A stretch of DNA of 64,000 nt, from NCBI RefSeq assembly GCF_006345805.1, contig NC_043008.1:21700001-21764000 (forward strand). The letters run 5' to 3'. The notes beneath the pieces were generated by a model. It did not search any database and was not told the DNA's origin. It was given only the letters and a program-made list of their open reading frames with translations. The position numbers and the translations under genes were made by a program. How positions within the stretch are numbered: position 1 is the stretch's first letter; every line of letters begins with the position of its first letter. Shown one piece after another: positions 1,421-48,239 of this stretch. Source of the DNA: Octopus sinensis (lineage: Eukaryota).

Positions 1421-1524
1421 ATATGTATGTTTGTATTATGTATGCATGCATGTATGTACGCATGTATGTATGTATGTATGTATGTATGTATGTATGTATG
1501 TATTTATGTATGTATGTATGCGTG

Positions 1525-1836
1525 CATGAACTCAAAAGTCATCTTCGTAGTCATAAAGCGAGACAGATGAGTGACAACCTGGCCACTGGTGGTGGTGTAA
1601 CACACCATACTAATCATATCTGTCGGGCATGTGAAAGAGAGTGTAATTCGGCAGGAGGACTTAAACGACATGTAAAGGTACATGAAGCCCAGTTACAACT
1701 ACAGCCGGCTATTACCGGTAAAGGTTTTAGTTGCCAATTTTGTACAAGACATTGTAGATCTTTACCTGGGCTAAAAAGTCACATCCGATCACAGCCCCAG
1801 TAACAGTTAAGCTTCGTGCAATGGCCATACTCGATA
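1525..1836 (+). mobile_element. 5'-truncated LINE 3' end encoding C2H2 zinc fingers (RTE-clade-like ORF2 C-terminus)
   Basis: Translates to LKSHLRSH...CRACERECNSAGGLKRHVKVH...CQFCTRHCRSLPGLKSHIRSQ*; no TGEKP linkers; short 3' UTR followed by a (TATG)n tail. Confidence 0.75.
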
Positions 1837-3546: not shown

Positions 3547-4067
3547 ATAATAATTGGAAAGTTTACTAATAGAAAATGTGCTAGAAATTTGGTCGCTAGT
3601 ATTTGCATAATTGCAAGGGGTGACGTAAAAGAAATGATTCAATTTTAGTGGTTTTATACTCTGAATGTTAAACACAATGTTACCCTAATCATTAAACAGA
3701 ACATTTATTTCCCCAATCCCTCTTTTTGTGATTATACAAATTCTTACGGCAAAAATCCTTCGTAACACTTTTTCTTCATGTAAAAGCAGCGAATTGGAAT
3801 TGTTACAGTATATATTCGCCATATTTGTTCTTACTTGAAAAAATTTAGAAGTTATTTAGTTGTTTGCGTTTTCTCTTTATAGATTTACTCTATAGCTGGT
3901 GATTATTAATATTAGTAGTATTACATCGGCCTAGGTCGACTTTGCCTTTTATCGTTTCGGTGCCAATGAAAATAAGTACCAGTTACGTACTGGGTTTCGA
4001 TGTTATTAACTTGTCACCTGCCCTAAAATTTTTGCTTATAACAGAAATGATTATATTTAGTATTACC

Positions 4068-4212
4068 TATCATCATGATCATCATCACCATCACCATCAT
4101 CATCATCACCATCATGATCATGATGATGATGATGATCATCATCATCATCACCATCATCACCATCATCATCATCATCATCATCATCATCACCATCACCATC
4201 ATCACCACCACC

Positions 4213-4246
<34 letters not shown>

Positions 4247-4254
4247 TCAACACC

Positions 4255-4300
<46 letters not shown>

Positions 4301-4436
4301 CCACCACCACCACCACCACCATCATCACCATCACCATCATCATCATCACCATCATGATCATGATGATGATGATGATCATCATCATCATCACCATCATCAT
4401 CATCTTCGTCATCATCATCATCATCACCATCATCAC

Positions 4437-4468
<32 letters not shown>

Positions 4469-4483
4469 CCACCACCACCACAC

Positions 4484-4515
<32 letters not shown>

Positions 4516-4522
4516 CCACACC

Positions 4523-4556
<34 letters not shown>

Positions 4557-4690
4557 TCAACACCACCACCACCACTACCATCATCACCATCACCATCACA
4601 TCATCACCATCATGATCATGATGATGATGATGATGATCATCATCATCACCATCATGATCATGATGATGATGATGATCATCACATCATCAC

Positions 4691-4722
<32 letters not shown>

Positions 4723-4772
4723 CCATCATCACCATCATCATCATCATCATCATCATCACCATCATCACCACC

Positions 4773-4803
<31 letters not shown>

Positions 4804-4820
4804 CCATCATCACCACCACC

Positions 4821-4854
<34 letters not shown>

Positions 4855-4967
4855 CCACCAACCCCACCACACCACCACCATCATCACCATCACCATCATC
4901 ATCATCACCATCATGATCATGATGATGATGATCATCATCATCATCATCACCATCATCATCATCTTCG

Positions 4968-5000
<33 letters not shown>

Positions 5001-5439
5001 CCATCATCACCATCACCATCACCCTCATCATCATCATCATCATCATCATCATCACCATCATCATCACCACCACCACCACCACCACCATCATCACCATCAC
5101 CATCATCATCATCACCATCATCATCACCATCATGATGATGATGATCATCATCATCATCATCACATCATCATCATCATCATCATCATCATCACCATCATCA
5201 CCATCACCATCATCATCATCACCATCATGATCATGATGATGATGATATCATCATCATCATCACCATCACCATCACCCTCATCATCATCATCATCATCATC
5301 ACCATCATCACCACCACCACCACCACACATCATCATCATCACCATCATCACACCACCACCACCACCACCACACCATCATCATCATCACCACCAACCACCA
5401 CCACCACACCACCATCATCATCATCACCATCATCACACC

Positions 5440-5485
<46 letters not shown>

Positions 5486-5655
5486 CCACCACCCTCACCA
5501 CCACCATCATCACCATCACCATCATCATCATCACCATCATGATCATGATGATGATGATCATCATCATCATCATCACCATCATCATCATCTTCGTCATCAT
5601 CATCATCATCACCATCATCACCATCATCATCATCATCATCATCATCACCATCATC

Positions 5656-5701
<46 letters not shown>

Positions 5702-5709
5702 CCACCACC

Positions 5710-5743
<34 letters not shown>

Positions 5744-6113
5744 TCAACACCACCACCACCACTACCATCATCACCATCACCATCATCATCATCACCATCA
5801 TGATCATGATGATGATGATGATGATCATCATCATCACCATCATGATCATGATGATGATGATGATCATCATCATCATCACCATCATCACATCATCATCATC
5901 ATCATCATCATCACCATCATCACCATCATCATCATCATCATCATCATCACCATCATCACCACCACACCACACCACCACCATCATCATCATCATCACCATC
6001 ATCACCACCACCACCACCACCCACCACCATCATCATCATCATCACCACCAACCCCACCACCACCACCATCATCATCATCACCATCACCCTCATCATCATC
6101 ATCATCATCATCA
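4068..6113. repeat. ~2-kb (CAT)/(CAC)/(GAT) trinucleotide array with higher-order repeats
   Basis: Recurring landmarks: cttcgt at 4404, 4963 and 5589, and catgatcatgatg blocks. Confidence 0.95.
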
Positions 6114-6549
6114 TTTGCGCGTTGGAAAAATGCTCCAAGGCATTTTTTTTATCTGCCTTTACGTTCTTAGTTCAAATTCCGCCGTGAAGGACTTTACCTC
6201 CCATTCTTTTAGAGCTGATAAAGTAAGTACCAGTTAAGTACTGGGGGTCAATGTGATCAACTTACCTTTCCCACCAAATTTCAGGTTTTATGCCTATAGT
6301 AGAAAAGATTATTGTCGTCGTCGTCGTCGTTGTTGTTGTTGTTGCTGCTGTGGTGGTGTTTTGTAGTTAATGAAAATTATAATTACTAGAAACGAAACAA
6401 AATGCTGGAAACAATTTTTATGGAAGTTAATGTAATTATTATTATTATTATTGTTAATGTCATCATCGTCGTCGTCATCATCATTATAATCATTATTAGT
6501 AATACAATCAATTAAAATGTTAGAAGCAAAAATGTCAGAGGCGGTTATT

Positions 6550-9754: not shown

Positions 9755-9854
9755 NNNNNNNNNNNNNNNNNNNNNNNNNNNNNNNNNNNNNNNNNNNNNN
9801 NNNNNNNNNNNNNNNNNNNNNNNNNNNNNNNNNNNNNNNNNNNNNNNNNNNNNN
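9755..9854. other. Assembly gap (100 N)
   Basis: Run of exactly 100 N, typical of an unknown-size scaffold gap. Confidence 0.99.
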
Positions 9855-9933
9855 GAGTGGATGCTCTAAAATTCTTGGCTTTGGGATTAAGAAAATATAG
9901 AAGGATTAGTTAATTATGATTTTTATTCAACAT

Positions 9934-19015: not shown

Positions 19016-19710
19016 AAGGCGGTGAGCTGGCAGAATCGTTAGCACGCCGGGCGAAATGCTTAGCCGTATTTCGTCTGCCGTTACGTTTTGAGTTCAAATT
19101 TCGCCGAGGTCGACTTTACCTTTCATCCTTTCGGGATCGATAAAATTAGTACCAGTTATGCACTAGGGTCGATATAATCGACTTAATTCCTTCCCCAAAA
19201 TTTAAGGCCTTGTGCTTCCAGTAGAAATGACTTTACCTGCTTAATAAAGAGACAATATAAAATTAGACGTTAGATTCAAATTTGAAGTTAAAATTAAACA
19301 TCGTTGGCGCATCAGACAAGATACTCAGCCGTATATCTTCCGACTCATTATGTTCTGAGTTCAAATTCCTATGAGGACATCTTGGCCTTTCATCCTCTCA
19401 AAGTCGGTAAAAAGAAAGTACTAACGAAGTACTGGGATCGATATAATCGACTTACTGCTTTCCTTAAAATTTGCTGGTCTTCACCACAACTGGAAACCAG
19501 GAAGCGAACAAGTAGAATGTTTAAGTCGGTCGGGCGAAACGCTACGCGACGTTTCGTCTGGTTTACGTTCAGAGTTCAAATTCCGCTGAGGTCGATTTTG
19601 CCTTTTATTCTTTCACGATCGACTAAATAAGTACCAGTTGAGCAAAGGGGTCGATGTAATCAATCAATCCTCTCCTCGAATATTTCAGGCGTATCCCTAT
19701 AGTAGAAAGA
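19016..19710 (+). mobile_element. Three consecutive SINE family A copies of differing age
   Basis: Heads near 19018, 19305 and 19515. Confidence 0.8.
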
Positions 19711-27540: not shown

Positions 27541-28306
27541 GGATGAAAGGCAAAGTCGACCTCAGCGGAATTTGAACTCACAACGTAACGGCAGACGAAA
27601 TACCGCTAAGCATTTCGCCCGGCGTATTAACGACTCTGTCAGCTCGCTGTCTTTCAAAGAATTCACTTTCACCGGGCAACATCTTCGTCTATTTTGTCTA
27701 AAATCTCCATTTTGGTATTTATGGCAAAGTTTCATTACTACTGTCTCTTTCTTTTTATCCCCTATTTACTTTTCTCTCCCGCTTTTTCTTTCTTTCTCCT
27801 TCAAACATTGTTTCTGTGTTATGATAATGATCTATCTTAATTTTTCTTTTTGTATTGACTCCCTTATTTCTTTACTACCCACAAGGGGCTAAACATAGAG
27901 GGGACAAACGAGGACAGACAAACGGATTAAGTCGATTACATCGACCCCCAGTGCGTAACTGGTACTTAATTTATCGACCCCGAAAGGATGAAAGGCAAAG
28001 TCGACCTCAGCGGAATTTGAACTCAGAACGTAACGGCAGATGAAATACCGCTAAGCATTTCGCCCGGCGTACTAACGACTCTGCCAGCTCGCTGTCTTCC
28101 AAAGAATTCACTTCCACCGGGCAACATCTTCGTCTATTTTGTCTAAAATCTCTATTTTGGTATTTATGGCAAAGTTTTCTTACTACTGTCTCTTTATTTT
28201 TACCCCCTATATACTTTTCTCTCCTGCTTTTTCTTTCTCCTTCAAACATTGTTTCTGTGTTATGATAATGATCTATCTTAATTTTTCTTCTTGTATTGAC
28301 TCCCGT
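27541..28306. repeat. Tandem direct duplication (partial SINE plus ~215 bp unique DNA), period ~446 bp
   Basis: 27541-27865 is similar to 27987-28306. Confidence 0.9.
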
Positions 28307-36289: not shown

Positions 36290-37970
36290 ATAATTTTCAC
36301 CTTAAAAAGTATTTTGATATGCTGCGACTTTTGATGAAATTTTTTCCGGAAATGTTGTTATCCTATATTAATAGTAAATATATATATATAACAACAGCAT
36401 ATAACATATAGTTTTTATGTGCTAAGATTGATCAACCTGAAATTATGTAGCCGGAGGTGCAGAAAACAGTGTTATATGAAATATGTGTGGCCATTCATAT
36501 TTCGAACGCGATGATATTCTCGGGAGTATTTCCACAAGGAAAGGTTTTCCAATGTCCGAGAGTAAATGAACGTGTTAAATATAATGTGTGCGCGTGCGCG
36601 CACACACACACACACACGCACGCACACACACACATACACATATATATAAGTGAGAGATATGGCCCTTCTCTTTGTCTCATAGTATTTAGTTATGTCCCGT
36701 TTTACATTCTTAATTCACTTCCTACATAGGATCGTTTTCCTTTTAATTATTTTGATGTCGCTAAATATGTACCAGTTACATATTGGGATTAATTTATTGG
36801 ACTATCCCCTAACCACCTTTAACTTTCCTTTTGGACAGAGGGAAAATTCCAAGAGTGAAGACTTTCTAGGATGAAGGATTTGGTGTAGCAGTGTGTGTGT
36901 GTGTAGGGCCTGGTTATGAAACGTAATATGGGTGATGAGATGACAAAAAACGAACGTGTCAGTTGTTCTTAGAAGAATTGTTACTTCTAAGCGGACTTCA
37001 GACAGCTCAGAGGAGTCTAGTTGAAGGAATAGAGTTTAATATATAAGTGGTAATAAAGCAGTAAGCTGGTGGAAACTGTAGTGCGCCGGACAAAAACATT
37101 AGTGGCATTTCGTCCGTCTTTTCGTTCTGAGTTCAAATTTCGCTGAGGGTGACTTTACCTATTCAGCCTTTCGGAGGGTCGATAAAATAAGTACAAGTTG
37201 AGCGGTCGATGTAATCAACTAGATCTTATTCCAAAATTGCTGGCCTTGTACCGAAATTTGAAGCCAATATATAACTGGCGTTTGTTTTATGAACTTAGGG
37301 GAGTTAGAAGGCGTTTATGGTGTGTCAATAATAGGTCAGACACTTTTTCTTTTTTCCTGCTACATTTTCCTGCTAGTCCCAGATACCACTGAAATGACGT
37401 GAATGTCTGCTTTGATTGAACTTGACCAAAAGCTGTCTAGAACAACATATAGGTTATGTTCCCAATTTAAATATTTTATATAATGTAGCATTTGTGTCTA
37501 CGTAAACCAATATTTATATTGTAACAGTAAAATATGAATCGATGAAATTCTGGGTGGATATTCTTACAGTGGAGGCTGAGGTTCCCAAGTGGAAAATGAG
37601 TCATTGTTCACGATGTTGCCGTGTTTCCCCATCACATTGAAGTTTCAGTACACCAGAGACAGCAATACTACTCCAATGTTGTATTGCAAGAAAAGTTCAA
37701 TATAGTTTCTCATCTTCCTAACTTTTCTCTATTTCTCTCTTTTTTTTGTTGCATAACTTCTATTGTGTCTATATAGATATTTGGAGATGCGAGTTGCTAA
37801 GTGAACATCTGTGTAGCTGTGCCATAGTTGCAGTTTAAAAATAAAAACCATTGCATGACTCTCTTTTTATAGATTACAACAAAGAGCTTTTCGTATATTG
37901 CCAAGGAAAACTAACGCTAATAAAGCCTATTTTTCTTCCTGCCGTTAGCAGTCAAGAAATCTCAGGTAAA
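36290..37970 (+). repeat. Source segment (blocks A 36290-37368 and B 37373-37970) of a local inverted duplication
   Basis: Near-identical reverse-complement copies at 38879-39849 and 39870-40468. Confidence 0.95.
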
Positions 37971-38454
37971 GGGTAATGACTCGAAACAACTGAAACGTCA
38001 CAACATATGCGTGTCAGAGTTGATGAGACACTCAACTAAGCTAATTGTTTTTTAAAGCCCATGATTTAGGTTCGCTTTCTCGATGGTAAAGGGTTTTTGG
38101 GTCGGTCTGATAGTAAATTGTTATTGAAAGATAATATAATTTACTGTTTTAAGGGTCGTTAACGTCGGATGAAAAGCTAACTGAGCAGTTACAACGACAT
38201 TTTAACGAGATTTAGCTTCATCAGGGTCATATGTGAAGGTCAACCCTACGAACACTTGAGATCCAGAGGGGGAAGAGTAGTACTTTATTGCAAGGTCCAT
38301 TAACAATCCGTTGCTGTCATCAATTAAGTTGCCTAAACCTGTCATTAATCTCTGCTAGCACTATACTGGAATCGAATAAAACGGCAATATTTTAAAATAA
38401 ACACGTACACACACACACATACACAAACACCGACACGTACAAATATATACACGA

Positions 38455-38865
38455 GATATTATATATACTCTACTTTTTTACTTGTTTCAGTCATTTGACT
38501 GCGGTCATGCTGGAGCACCGCCTTTAATCGAGCAACACGACCTCGGGACTTATTCTTTGTAAGCCCAGTACTTATTCTATCGGTCTTTTTTGCCGAACCA
38601 CTAAGTGACGGGGACATAAACACACTAGCATCGGTTGTCAAGCGATGTTGGGGGGACAAGCAGAGACATACAAACATACACGCACATATATATATACATA
38701 TATACGACGGGCTTCTTTCAGTTTCCGTCTACCAAATCCACTCACAAGGCTTTGGTCGGCCCGAGGCTATAGTAGAAGACACTTGCCCAAGGTGCCATGC
38801 AGTGGGACTGAACTCGGAACCATGTGGCTGGTAAACAAGCTACTTACCACACAGCTACTCCTGCA
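38455..38865 (-). mobile_element. SINE family B, full length
   Basis: Reverse complement of the family B pattern. Confidence 0.9.
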
Positions 38866-38878
38866 TATATCTTAAGCA

Positions 38879-40468
38879 AAAATGTAGCAGGAAAAAAGAA
38901 AAAGTGTCTGACCTATTGTATTACAATATTCATTTACACACCATAAACGCCTTCTAACTCCCCTAAGTTCATAAAACAATAGGTAAAGTCACCCTCAGCG
39001 AAATTTGAACTCAGAACGAAAAGACGGACGAAATGCCACTAATGTTTTTGTCCGGCGCACTAGTTTCCACCAGCTTACTGCTTTATTACCACTTATATAT
39101 TAAACTCTATTCCTTCAACTAGACTCCTCTGAGCTGTCTGGAGTCCGCTTAGAAGTAGCAATTCTTCTAAGCACAACTGACACGCTCGTTTTTTTCTCAT
39201 CTCATCACCCATATTACGTTTCATAACCAGGCCCTACACACACACACACTGCTACACCAAATCCTTCATCCTAGAAAGTCTTCACTCTTGGAATTTTCTC
39301 TCTGTTCAAAAGGAAAGTTAAAGGTGGTTAGGGGATAGTCCAATAAATTAATCCCAATATGTAACTGGTACATATTTAGCGACATCAAAATAATTAAAAG
39401 GAAAACGATCCTATGTAGGAAGTGAATTAAGAATGTAAAACGGGACATAACTAAATACTATGAGACAAAGAGAAGGGCCATATCTCTCACTTATATATAT
39501 GTGTATGTGTGTGTGTGCGTGCGTGTGTGTGTGTGTGTGCGCGCACGCGCACACATTATATTTAACACGTTCATTTACTCTCGGACATTGGAAAACCTTT
39601 CCTTGTGGAAATACTCCCGAGAATATCATCACGTTCGAAATATGAATGGCCACACATATTTCATATAACACTGTTTTCTGCATCTCCGGCTACATAATTT
39701 CAGGTTGATCAATCTTAGCACATAAAAACTATATGTTATATGCTGTTGTTATATATATATATTTACTACTAATATAGGATAAAAAATTTCCGGAAAAAAT
39801 TTCATCAAAAGTCGCAGCATATCAAAATACTTTTTAAGGTGAAAATTATGCGCGCGCACACATTATATTTTTACCTGAGATTTCTTGACTGCTAACGGCA
39901 GGAAGAAAAATAGGCTTTGTTAGCGTTAGTTTTCCTTGGCAATAGACGAAAAGCTCTTTGTTGTAATCTATAAAAAGAGAGTCATGCAATGGTTTTTATT
40001 TTTAAACTGCAACTGTGGCACAACTACACAGATGTTCACTTAGCAACTCGCATCTCCAAATATCTATATAGACACAATAGAAGTTATGCAACAAAAAAAA
40101 GGAGAGAAATAGAGAAAAGTTAGGAAGATGAGAAACTATATTGAACTTTTCTTGCAATACAACATTGGAGTAGTATTGCTGTCTCTGGTGTACTGAAACT
40201 TCAATGTGATGGGGAAACACGGCGACATCGTGAACAATGACTCATTTTCCACTTGGGAACCTCAGCCTCCACTGTAAGAATATCCACCCAGAATTTCATC
40301 GATTCATATTTTACTGTTACAATATAAATATTGGTTTACGTAGACACAAATGCTACATTATATAAAATATTTAAATTGGGAACATAACCTATATGTTGTT
40401 CTAGACAGCTTTTGGTCAAATTCAATCAAAGCAGACATTCACGTCATTTCAGTGGTATCTGGGACTAG
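38879..40468 (-). repeat. Inverted, circularly permuted copy (B then A) of 36290-37970
   Basis: Block order and junction were read directly from the sequence. Confidence 0.95.
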
Positions 40469-40614
40469 ATAATCTGCGAAAATACAAATCACGCTTATTG
40501 GGGTTTTCTTCCTTACCCTATACTTCCTTATCACTGTTAAGATTTCTGATCCTCGAGCAGTGCTTAGTCGGCGGTGCTTGTTCTGTTACAAGCATCAAGG
40601 GCATATGTAGTCCC

Positions 40615-40827
40615 TTTCAAAATTGTGTGGTAAGAAGCTTGCTTCCCAACTACGTGGTTCTAGAAGTTCGGTCTCACCGCGTAGCATCTTGGGCAAGTGT
40701 CTTCTGCGATAGCCTCAGGCCGACCAAAATTTGTAATTGGATTTGGTAGACGGAAACTGAAAGAATCCCATCGTATGCATATATATACATATATATCATA
40801 TGTGTGTGTATCTGTATAAATATATAT

Positions 40828-40902
<75 letters not shown>

Positions 40903-41100
40903 TATATATATATACATACATGTATGTATATTGTATGTGTTAATCTGTATGTATATATACATTTGTGTCTGTGTTTGTGTTTGTCCCCACACCATCGCTT
41001 GACAACCTAGCAATTCGGCAAAAGGGACAGGTAGAATAAGTACTAGGCCTACAAAGAATAAGTCCCGGGGTCAAATGACTGTAAAATGTAAAAGAATAAA
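40615..41100 (+). mobile_element. SINE family B, degenerate
   Basis: Head, core, microsatellite and partial tail. Confidence 0.75.
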
Positions 41101-41244
41101 GAATATTATCTGGTATTCTCATCTCCATAGGCTGCTCTATATTTCTACCTCTCTTCCTCCTCCTCTCCCTCCCTCTCTTTCTCTCTTCCTCTTTTTCTGT
41201 TGCTGTCTCGCTTTTCTTTGGTCGACTTACAAATTTCAATGCAG

Positions 41245-41649: not shown

Positions 41650-41683
<34 letters not shown>

Positions 41684-41686
41684 TTG

Positions 41687-41760
<74 letters not shown>

Positions 41761-41980
41761 TGTTGTAGTAGTAGTAAGCAGAAGATGAAAGATTGAATTC
41801 AAGTGAAAGAAAAAGAAAACCGAATGGGGAGAAAAACAAAAAAGATAACGCGATGAAAATTCAGAGCAGGAGGCGCATGAAGAAGGAGGAGGAGGAGGAG
41901 GAGAAGAAGAAGAAGAAAGAGGAGGAGGAGGAGAAGAAGAAGAAGAAGAAGAAAGAGGAGGAGAAGAAAGAGGAGAAGAA
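41650..41980. repeat. (TAG)n and (GAA/GAG)n microsatellites
   Basis: Direct reading of the sequence. Confidence 0.9.
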
Positions 41981-48007: not shown

Positions 48008-48239
48008 TATTTCTTTATTACCCACAAGGGGCTAAACACAGAGGGGACAAACAAGGACAGACATAGGTATTAAGTCGATTACATCGACTCCAGTGCGTAA
48101 CTGGTACTTAATTTATCGACCCCGAAAGGATGAAAGGCAAAGTCGACCTCGGCAGAATTTGAACTCACAACGTAACGCAGACGAAATACCGCTAAGCATT
48201 TCGCCCGGCGTGCTAACGTTTCTGCCAGCTTGCCGCCTT
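48008..48239 (-). mobile_element. SINE family A with 20-bp target-site duplication
   Basis: gtggtttacagggccttacc (47988-48007) and gtggtttacagggctttacc (48240-48259). Confidence 0.92.

What the first reader, a model, noticed from the sequence alone, without database searches (positions are those of the whole stretch)
36290..40468. Circularly permuted inverted duplication: footprint of a circular-DNA intermediate
Seen: the source is A(36290-37368)-B(37373-37970). The copy read on the minus strand is B then A, with the original outer ends joined (39849/39870) and the opening point at 37369-37372 (cctg lost). No TSD is visible. Known: permuted duplicates are the signature of circle-mediated translocation. 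Inference: a ~1.7-kb eccDNA excised or copied, reopened and re-integrated about 0.9 kb away.
Basis: partly seen in the sequence, partly recalled or inferred. Interest (0 to 1): 0.75.

Follow-up and report, generated by a model that had tools for sequence, protein, structure and literature searches.

The report
Permuted inverted local duplication, octopus DNA
A 1.7-kb stretch of non-coding octopus DNA has a slightly diverged second copy 0.9 kb away that is flipped and "rotated" as if it had passed through a ring. This is a clean small example of a known kind of rearrangement scar, and the sequence alone cannot prove that a DNA circle existed.

Summary
Segment 36290-37970 (A 36290-37368, B 37373-37970) recurs inverted at 38879-40468 in the order B then A. 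The copy is exactly one unit long: only 4 nt (cctg, 37369-37372) are missing at the opening point. Identity is 98.3-98.8%, and the differences are mostly transitions, so this is true divergence rather than assembly noise.

- The B-end/A-start joint is not a plain join. It holds a 20-nt patch (39850-39869) copied 19/20 from inside A (36578-36597), which is a repair scar and marks the right-hand copy as the derived one.
- The copy lacks 120 nt of an internal SINE and carries 14 extra nt.
- The copy lies in the roughly 163-nt spacer of a head-to-head SINE pair that folds into a strong hairpin.

No transposon features, genes or RNA families are involved. The host is an Octopus-type genome.

A unit-length circular intermediate is the simplest history (confidence about 0.45). 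The same three junctions also arise from three other routes: a local copy-and-paste template-switching event, capture of two adjacent fragments, or tandem duplication followed by inversion and a recombination flip. No other allele could be retrieved to decide. I rate it a new member of a known kind, of modest interest.

The parts
36290..37368 (+). Block A of the source unit (1079 nt)
   Evidence: Matches rc 38879-39849; 12 substitutions plus indels
36578..36597 (+). Template of the 20-nt junction patch, inside A (its twin in the copy is 39543-39562)
   Evidence: 19/20 match to 39850-39869; the only matches in the window; 0.01 expected by chance at up to 3 mismatches
37055..37267 (+). Dispersed SINE-like repeat (SINE2) inside A, whole in the source
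   Evidence: Matches many window copies, e.g. 19016-19213, 27930-28074, 48073-48239
37162..37281 (+). 120 nt present in the source but deleted from the copy; removes the 3' half of SINE2; flanked by 2-nt TT microhomology
   Evidence: Global alignment
37352..37377 (+). 13-nt tandem duplication TTTTCCTGCTACA/TTTTCCTGCTAGT that contains the opening point
   Evidence: Read; repeat-coverage statistics
37369..37372 (+). Opening point: cctg, present in the source and absent from the copy
   Evidence: Junction views
37373..37970 (+). Block B of the source unit (598 nt)
   Evidence: 98.8% match to rc 39870-40468; 6 substitutions and 1 indel
37971..38459 (.). Unique spacer between source and copy
   Evidence: No other match in the window
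38460..38870 (-). Old SINE1 copy, about 84-86% identical to its longer relatives in the window. Its 5' end is 8 nt from the copy (38871-38878 is unique flank). Left arm of the head-to-head SINE pair.
38879..39849 (-). Copy of block A (971 nt), inverted
38918..38931 (-). 14 nt present only in the copy; no local template found
39850..39869 (-). 20-nt templated patch at the B-end/A-start fusion joint
39870..40468 (-). Copy of block B (599 nt), inverted
40469..40623 (.). Unique right flank of the insertion; inferred to have been contiguous with 38878 before the event
   Evidence: No other match; no short shared words with the local region
40624..41115 (+). Second, degenerate SINE1 copy, head-to-head with 38460-38870. 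Right arm of the hairpin-prone pair.
   Evidence: 81% over 190 nt plus further blocks; hairpin fold

Best explanation
A single rearrangement, recent at about 1.2% divergence, made one extra copy of the 1,681-bp non-coding segment 36290-37970. Its two outer ends were joined head-to-tail by error-prone end joining, which left a 20-nt patch copied from 288 nt inside the segment. That join gives a ring one unit long. The ring was then opened at 37369-37372, with 4 nt lost, and was ligated or copied in reverse orientation into a break 908 nt downstream. That break lay in the roughly 163-nt spacer between two head-to-head SINEs, which form a hairpin-prone site. Later the copy lost 120 nt and gained 14 nt. 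Shown: the structure, the exact unit length, the templated patch, the near-absence of microhomology at the two outer junctions (0-1 nt) with no target duplication, and the SINE-pair context. Inferred: the ring itself, the order of events, the break at the hairpin, and the donor being a sister chromatid or an extra replicated copy, since the source is intact.
For: Order flip with both blocks in the same orientation. The copy's ends map 4 nt apart in the source, so it is exactly one unit. For two independently copied pieces from a 2-4 kb neighbourhood, that adjacency would occur by chance about 0.2-0.5% of the time (my estimate). A and B are equally diverged (12/956 and 6/598 substitutions), which fits one event. 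The fusion joint carries a 19/20 templated patch, the kind of scar polymerase-theta-type end joining leaves (PMC4912351, PMC5068794, listed). This marks B-patch-A as the new junction and the left copy as the source. No single inversion of an ABAB array gives the observed order (enumerated by hand). The circle signature is an accepted reading of such flips in human and cattle duplications (PMC7450558). The transition/transversion count of 13:5 and the absence of adapters argue against an artefact.
Against: A free circle has no reason to land 908 nt from its origin, although a scan limited to one window can only see local copies. The source is intact, so the ring cannot be a simple excision from this chromatid. 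The three pieces B, patch and A all come from one strand of one 1.7-kb stretch, which is equally typical of serial template switching. The opening point lies in a 13-nt tandem repeat, which could itself be a repair scar and so blurs polarity. No circle, empty site or other allele was observed.
Confidence: 0.45

Rival explanations
1. Local copy-and-paste repair without a closed circle (MMBIR/FoSTeS-type, a 'local n-jump'). A 3' end from a break or stalled fork at 38878 invades the nearby + strand. It copies A backwards from 37368 to 36290, makes a 20-nt detour inside A, and re-primes at 37970. It then copies B backwards until it runs into the place where it started (37373), and returns to 40469.
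For: The copy is 908 nt from its source and inverted, and the source is retained, so this is a copy and not a cut. All three pieces are templated from the same strand and the same 1.7 kb. The target lies in a hairpin-prone SINE pair that could stall a fork. Local multi-junction copy-number gains with inverted junctions are a described class (PMC7025897).
Against: The 4-nt adjacency of the entry and exit points needs the extra assumption that synthesis stops at its own starting duplex. Otherwise it is a coincidence of about 0.2-0.5%. Microhomology at the two outer junctions is 0-1 nt. No further short templated pieces were found at them.
Confidence: 0.2
2. Three ordinary steps. (1) Tandem duplication gives A-B-patch-A-B. 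(2) The stretch [B-patch-A-B-spacer] is inverted. (3) Homologous recombination between the now inverted A arms flips [rc spacer-rcB] back. The end product is exactly A-B-spacer-rcA-patch-rcB.
For: By my own derivation the end product and all three novel junctions are identical to what is observed. The B-end/A-start joint with a templated patch is also the typical junction of a small tandem duplication. This route explains the local position and the intact source.
Against: It needs three independent rearrangements in 4 kb within a short time, because A and B are equally diverged. No intermediate was seen.
Confidence: 0.12
3. Clustered breakage. A sister chromatid broke at 36290, 37370 and 37970. 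The two adjacent fragments A and B were then captured together in a break at 38878/40469 and happened to ligate in the permuted order.
For: It uses the same four breaks and three joins as the circle model. The adjacency of A-end and B-start comes for free because it is one break. Permuted same-orientation arrangements are 2 of the 8 possible. Capture of DNA fragments at breaks is documented (for example PMC11372161, listed).
Against: It requires four breaks within 4.2 kb on two chromatids, and gives the observed type of order only 25% of the time. The templated patch implies synthesis-dependent joining rather than simple ligation.
Confidence: 0.1
4. Assembly artefact: a chimeric or palindromic read, or a misplaced haplotype copy.
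For: The window comes from a scaffolded, repeat-rich assembly with an N gap at 9755-9854. Raw reads are not available here.
Against: A missed-adapter palindrome would give rcB-rcA, not rcA-rcB. The copies differ by 18 substitutions (13 transitions) and three larger indels. No adapter sequence was found. The gap is 26 kb away. The joint carries a biologically typical templated patch.
Confidence: 0.07
5. A-B is a non-autonomous mobile element that moves through a circular form (tyrosine-recombinase, IS-like or rolling-circle type) and integrated twice.
For: Only the circular permutation itself.
Against: There are no terminal inverted or direct repeats, no target duplication and no recombinase or any other credible ORF. 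No other copy exists in 64 kb or in a 34-kb Octopus vulgaris locus, apart from the embedded SINE. No protein homologue was found.
Confidence: 0.03

Closest known systems
Circle-mediated segmental duplications and translocations (cattle KIT colour-sidedness alleles; 16 human 'cSDPs', Chicote et al. 2020, PMC7450558)
   Same: Block order flips from A-B to B-A, with the outer ends fused and a single opening point. Breakpoints show no homology, only short indels or 0-2 nt microhomology. Breakpoints lie next to interspersed repeats, and there are two copies only (searches compared).
   Different: This case is about 1.7 kb instead of tens to hundreds of kb. The copy is 0.9 kb from the donor rather than distant or on another chromosome. 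The fusion joint has a 20-nt templated patch rather than 0-2 nt. No gene is involved. The host is a mollusc.
Polymerase-theta-type (alt-EJ / SD-MMEJ) templated insertions at repair junctions (PMC4912351, PMC5068794, PMC5728401)
   Same: A short insert at a non-homologous joint is copied, with slippage, from sequence near one of the joined ends.
   Different: The template lies 288 nt from the joined end, which by my own recollection is further than usual. Flanking microhomology is at best 1-3 nt (a run of A). Enzyme dependence cannot be tested.
Local n-jumps and templated-insertion events in cancer genomes, and germline FoSTeS/MMBIR complex duplications (PMC7025897)
   Same: Three clustered junctions lie within 4.2 kb. 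Copy number goes from one to two. The junctions are inverted, the result is a single phased derivative, and the source is retained.
   Different: Those events do not in general give an exact one-unit circular permutation.
Small eccDNA / microDNA of animal cells (reviews PMC9527254, PMC11879418)
   Same: The size is in the range reported for eccDNA, the origin is non-coding, and the circle junction is made by end joining.
   Different: Germline re-integration of such small circles is rarely documented, and here the circle is only inferred.

Membership tests
Circle-mediated (circularly permuted) duplication | Block order flipped A-B to B-A with both blocks in the same relative orientation | tested here: met
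Circle-mediated (circularly permuted) duplication | Donor's outer ends fused in the copy (fusion point) | tested here: met
   37970 is joined to 36290 through a 20-nt patch at 39850-39869
Circle-mediated (circularly permuted) duplication | Single opening point: the copy's ends map to adjacent donor positions (exact unit length) | tested here: met
   The ends map to 37368 and 37373; 4 nt are lost
Circle-mediated (circularly permuted) duplication | No extended homology at breakpoints; only microhomology or short indels | tested here: met
   0-1 nt at the two outer junctions, no TSD; no shared repeats across the breakpoints
Circle-mediated (circularly permuted) duplication | Ancestral empty site in an outgroup, or physical detection of the circle | not testable with these tools
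   No other allele could be retrieved. The one Octopus vulgaris locus fetched is not syntenic.
Templated-insertion (alt-EJ/TMEJ) junction | Insert matches nearby sequence far better than chance | tested here: met
   19/20 match; 0.01 matches expected in the window at up to 3 mismatches
Templated-insertion (alt-EJ/TMEJ) junction | Priming and resolving microhomologies flank the insert | tested here: inconclusive
   Left boundary is ambiguous within a run of A. Right boundary has 1 nt (A), or 4 nt if a GC-repeat slippage is allowed.
Transposable element with a circular intermediate | Defined termini (TIR/LTR/hairpin), target-site duplication, recombinase ORF or multiple copies | tested here: not met
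   Only the window and one 34-kb locus could be searched for copies.
MMBIR/FoSTeS complex rearrangement | Several template switches within one locale, with microhomology at the junctions | tested here: inconclusive
   Three local junctions and a short templated piece fit. Microhomology of 0-1 nt at two junctions, and the exact unit length, are not predicted.
Palindromic or chimeric read artefact | True palindrome order (A B rcB rcA), near-identical arms, adapter remnant | tested here: not met
   The order is rcA-rcB, substitution divergence is 1.2% with ts:tv 13:5, and no adapters were found

The most novel reading that the evidence does not exclude
This is a fixed germline re-insertion of a small (1.7-kb) extrachromosomal circle in a cephalopod, resolved to the base pair, including a polymerase-theta-type templated patch at the circle junction. 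If so, small eccDNA would be an under-counted source of short dispersed and local duplications in animal genomes, detectable genome-wide as unit-length permuted copies.
Probability: 0.4. Interest if true: 0.45.

Novelty: new member of a known kind. Interest (0 to 1): 0.3.

Why it matters
If the ring reading is right, this locus is a very small, fully resolved example of circle-mediated duplication outside mammals and yeast. The joint preserves how the ring was closed, through a templated repair patch. That would make 'unit-length permuted copy' a usable search key for asking how often small eccDNA returns to animal germlines. The locus has no gene, RNA or regulatory feature that I could detect. 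Its value is therefore as a mutational footprint, not as a functional element. As a side effect it creates 0.6-1.0 kb inverted repeats in a crossed (non-nested) arrangement, which may be a future source of local instability.

Tried and rejected
- **Other alleles or species:** An exact look-up of the 90-aa ORF in the copy of A found nothing on record. A homology search with the equivalent ORF in source block A returned no hit. A metagenome scan with a 28-mer from B returned 0 matches. The only external sequence obtained, Octopus vulgaris OX597815.1:81.02 Mb (L001), shares SINEs with the window but is not syntenic.
- **RNA genes:** Rfam gave only sub-threshold hits to microsatellite-like miRNA families, and no tRNAs were found.
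- **Coding potential:** ORFs in A and B are short and partly microsatellite-encoded. The window as a whole has no convincing gene.
- **Transposon reading:** There are no termini, no TSD and no other copies.
- **SINE-mediated retro-event or circular RNA template:** The fusion joint is not at splice sites and carries a DNA-templated patch. The SINE is much older than the duplication (84-86% versus 98.8% identity) and is separated from the copy by 8 nt of unique flank.
- **Simple inversion of ABAB:** Every single inversion places A next to rcA, or leaves B-B adjacent, which is not the observed order.
- **Sequencing adapters at junctions:** None found.
- **Further templated snippets at the outer junctions, or a template for the 14-nt insert:** None found.
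- **Literature search for the SINE sequence:** No hit.

Full report
**Observation.**
- 36290-37163 is the reverse complement of 38978-39849 (98.3% over 875 columns).
- 37282-37368 matches rc 38879-38979.
- 37373-37970 is the reverse complement of 39870-40468 (98.8% over 599 columns).

This is the only long repeat pair above 92% identity in the whole window. On the + strand the order is A, B, a 908-nt spacer, rcA, rcB. Read on the minus strand, the copy is therefore B followed by A. The copy's two outer ends correspond to source positions 37368 and 37373. The copy is thus exactly one unit long, minus the four bases cctg. No target-site duplication is present.

**Corrections to the description.**
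1. The 'joined outer ends' are separated by 20 nt (39850-39869). This patch matches 19/20 a sequence inside A (36578-36597, and its twin 39543-39562). Those are the only matches in 64 kb, against 0.01 expected at up to three mismatches.
2. The copy of A lacks 120 nt (37162-37281). This is the 3' half of a dispersed SINE-like repeat that is whole in the source, and the deletion is flanked by a 2-nt TT microhomology.
3. The copy carries 14 extra nt at 38918-38931, for which no template was found.

**Real or artefact.**
- The two copies differ by 18 substitutions, 13 of them transitions, in about 1,554 aligned columns (1.2%).
- A and B are equally diverged, at 12/956 and 6/598.
- That spectrum, the three larger indels, the absence of adapter sequence and the 26-kb distance from the only N gap argue against a chimeric-read or haplotype artefact.
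- A missed-adapter palindrome would also give rcB-rcA, not rcA-rcB.
- Raw reads were not available, so a residual doubt remains.

**Context.** The window is repeat-rich non-coding DNA of an Octopus-type genome.
- A zinc-finger-like ORF at 1519-1800 is 90% identical to an unnamed Octopus vulgaris protein.
- The O. vulgaris locus fetched shares the window's SINE families at 85-93% but is not syntenic.
- Nothing in A, B or the spacer looks coding.
- Rfam gives only sub-threshold microsatellite-type hits, and there are no tRNAs.
- A-B has no terminal repeats and no other copy in the window.

**The insertion site.**
- The copy lies 8 nt from the 5' end of an old SINE (38460-38870, minus strand, about 84-86% identical to its longer relatives).
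- A second, degenerate SINE of the same family starts 155 nt to the right, in the opposite orientation (40624-41115).
- Removing the copy leaves a head-to-head SINE pair with a roughly 163-nt spacer.
- As single-stranded DNA this reconstructed site folds into a long hairpin (-152.9 kcal/mol, z = -16.5). It has 164 pairs between the two arms, and the insertion point lies in the apical domain.
- That such a site was break- or stall-prone is my inference.

**Polarity.** The 20-nt patch is what error-prone end joining or template switching leaves at a new junction (PMC4912351, PMC5068794). B-patch-A is therefore the derived joint and the left copy is the source. The intact SINE in the source is consistent with this but not decisive.

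One caveat applies. The opening point lies in the second unit of a 13-nt tandem repeat (TTTTCCTGCTACA / TTTTCCTGCTAGT, 37352-37377). Only 5% of A-B lies in repeats of that kind. This may be chance, a slipped-structure break site, or itself a repair scar. The much stronger statistics of the 20-nt patch decide the polarity for me.

**Mechanism.** The exact unit length is the key fact. If A and B had been copied independently from the neighbourhood, their ends would fall within 4 nt of each other only about 0.2-0.5% of the time (my estimate). A ring one unit long, closed by joining 37970 to 36290 and reopened at 37369-37372, gives it automatically. This is the accepted reading of A-B to B-A flips in cattle and human segmental duplications (PMC7450558). 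I enumerated the single inversions of an ABAB array, and none gives the observed order.

The sequence cannot show that a closed circle existed. Three other histories yield the same three junctions:
1. **A local copy-and-paste excursion.** A 3' end at 38878 copies A backwards, detours 20 nt, re-primes at 37970 and stops where it began. This explains the 908-nt distance, the inverted orientation and the intact source. It resembles the 'local n-jumps' of PMC7025897. It needs an ad hoc stop rule.
2. **Joint capture of two adjacent fragments from a shattered sister chromatid.** This gives a permuted order in 2 of 8 arrangements.
3. **A three-step route.** Tandem duplication to A-B-patch-A-B, then inversion of [B-patch-A-B-spacer], then a homologous flip between the inverted A arms reproduces the structure exactly. 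It needs three separate events.

A free eccDNA also has no reason to land 908 nt from home, although a window-limited scan can only notice local copies. I put the ring at 0.45, local replicative copying at 0.20, the three-step route at 0.12, fragment capture at 0.10, artefact at 0.07 and a mobile element at 0.03.

**Comparison and novelty.** The locus meets every sequence-level criterion of circle-mediated duplication: order flip, fusion point, single opening point, and no homology at the breakpoints. The decisive criteria, an ancestral empty site and a physical circle, are not testable here. It differs from the published cases in four ways:
- It is about 1.7 kb rather than tens to hundreds of kb.
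- It is local and inverted.
- It lies in a mollusc.
- Its closing joint carries a 20-nt templated patch.

It is a new member of a known kind, with no detectable functional content. Interest is modest (0.3). It would rise if a genome-wide search showed many such unit-length permuted copies.

Noticed in passing
window 38640-38878 + 40469-40830 (reconstructed empty site): Two SINE1 copies lie head-to-head with a roughly 163-nt spacer. As ssDNA the site folds into a long hairpin (-152.9 kcal/mol, z -16.5). The duplicated copy sits in its apical domain.
   Followed up: partly
window 37352-37377: A 13-nt tandem duplication (11/13 identical) lies exactly at the point where the unit was opened. Its significance is unclear (p about 0.014-0.05).
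   Followed up: partly
window 3942-6240: About 2.3 kb of CAT/CAC-type trinucleotide arrays with extreme GC skew (-0.84). They give long His/Ile/Thr/Ser-run pseudo-ORFs.
   Followed up: no
window 9755-9854: A run of 100 N, which is an assembly gap. A SINE1 copy starts just after it, at 9919.
   Followed up: no
window 27541-27863 and 27986-28304: A 94% identical direct repeat 445 nt apart in a SINE2-rich stretch. It may be a small local duplication.
   Followed up: no
window 1519-1800: An ORF fragment with two C2H2-like zinc-finger motifs is 90% identical to an unnamed Octopus vulgaris protein. It is probably a repeat-derived paralogue, because its locus (L001) is not syntenic.
   Followed up: partly
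window 41650-41780 and 41884-41980: Long (GTA)n and (GAG/GAA)n microsatellites lie just right of the second SINE.
   Followed up: no
window 36290-37163 / 38978-39849 and 37373-37970 / 39870-40468: The two inverted-repeat pairs are crossed (A B ... A' B'), not nested. A transcript or single strand therefore could not pair both fully at once, which is an unusual topology for a long inverted repeat.
   Followed up: no
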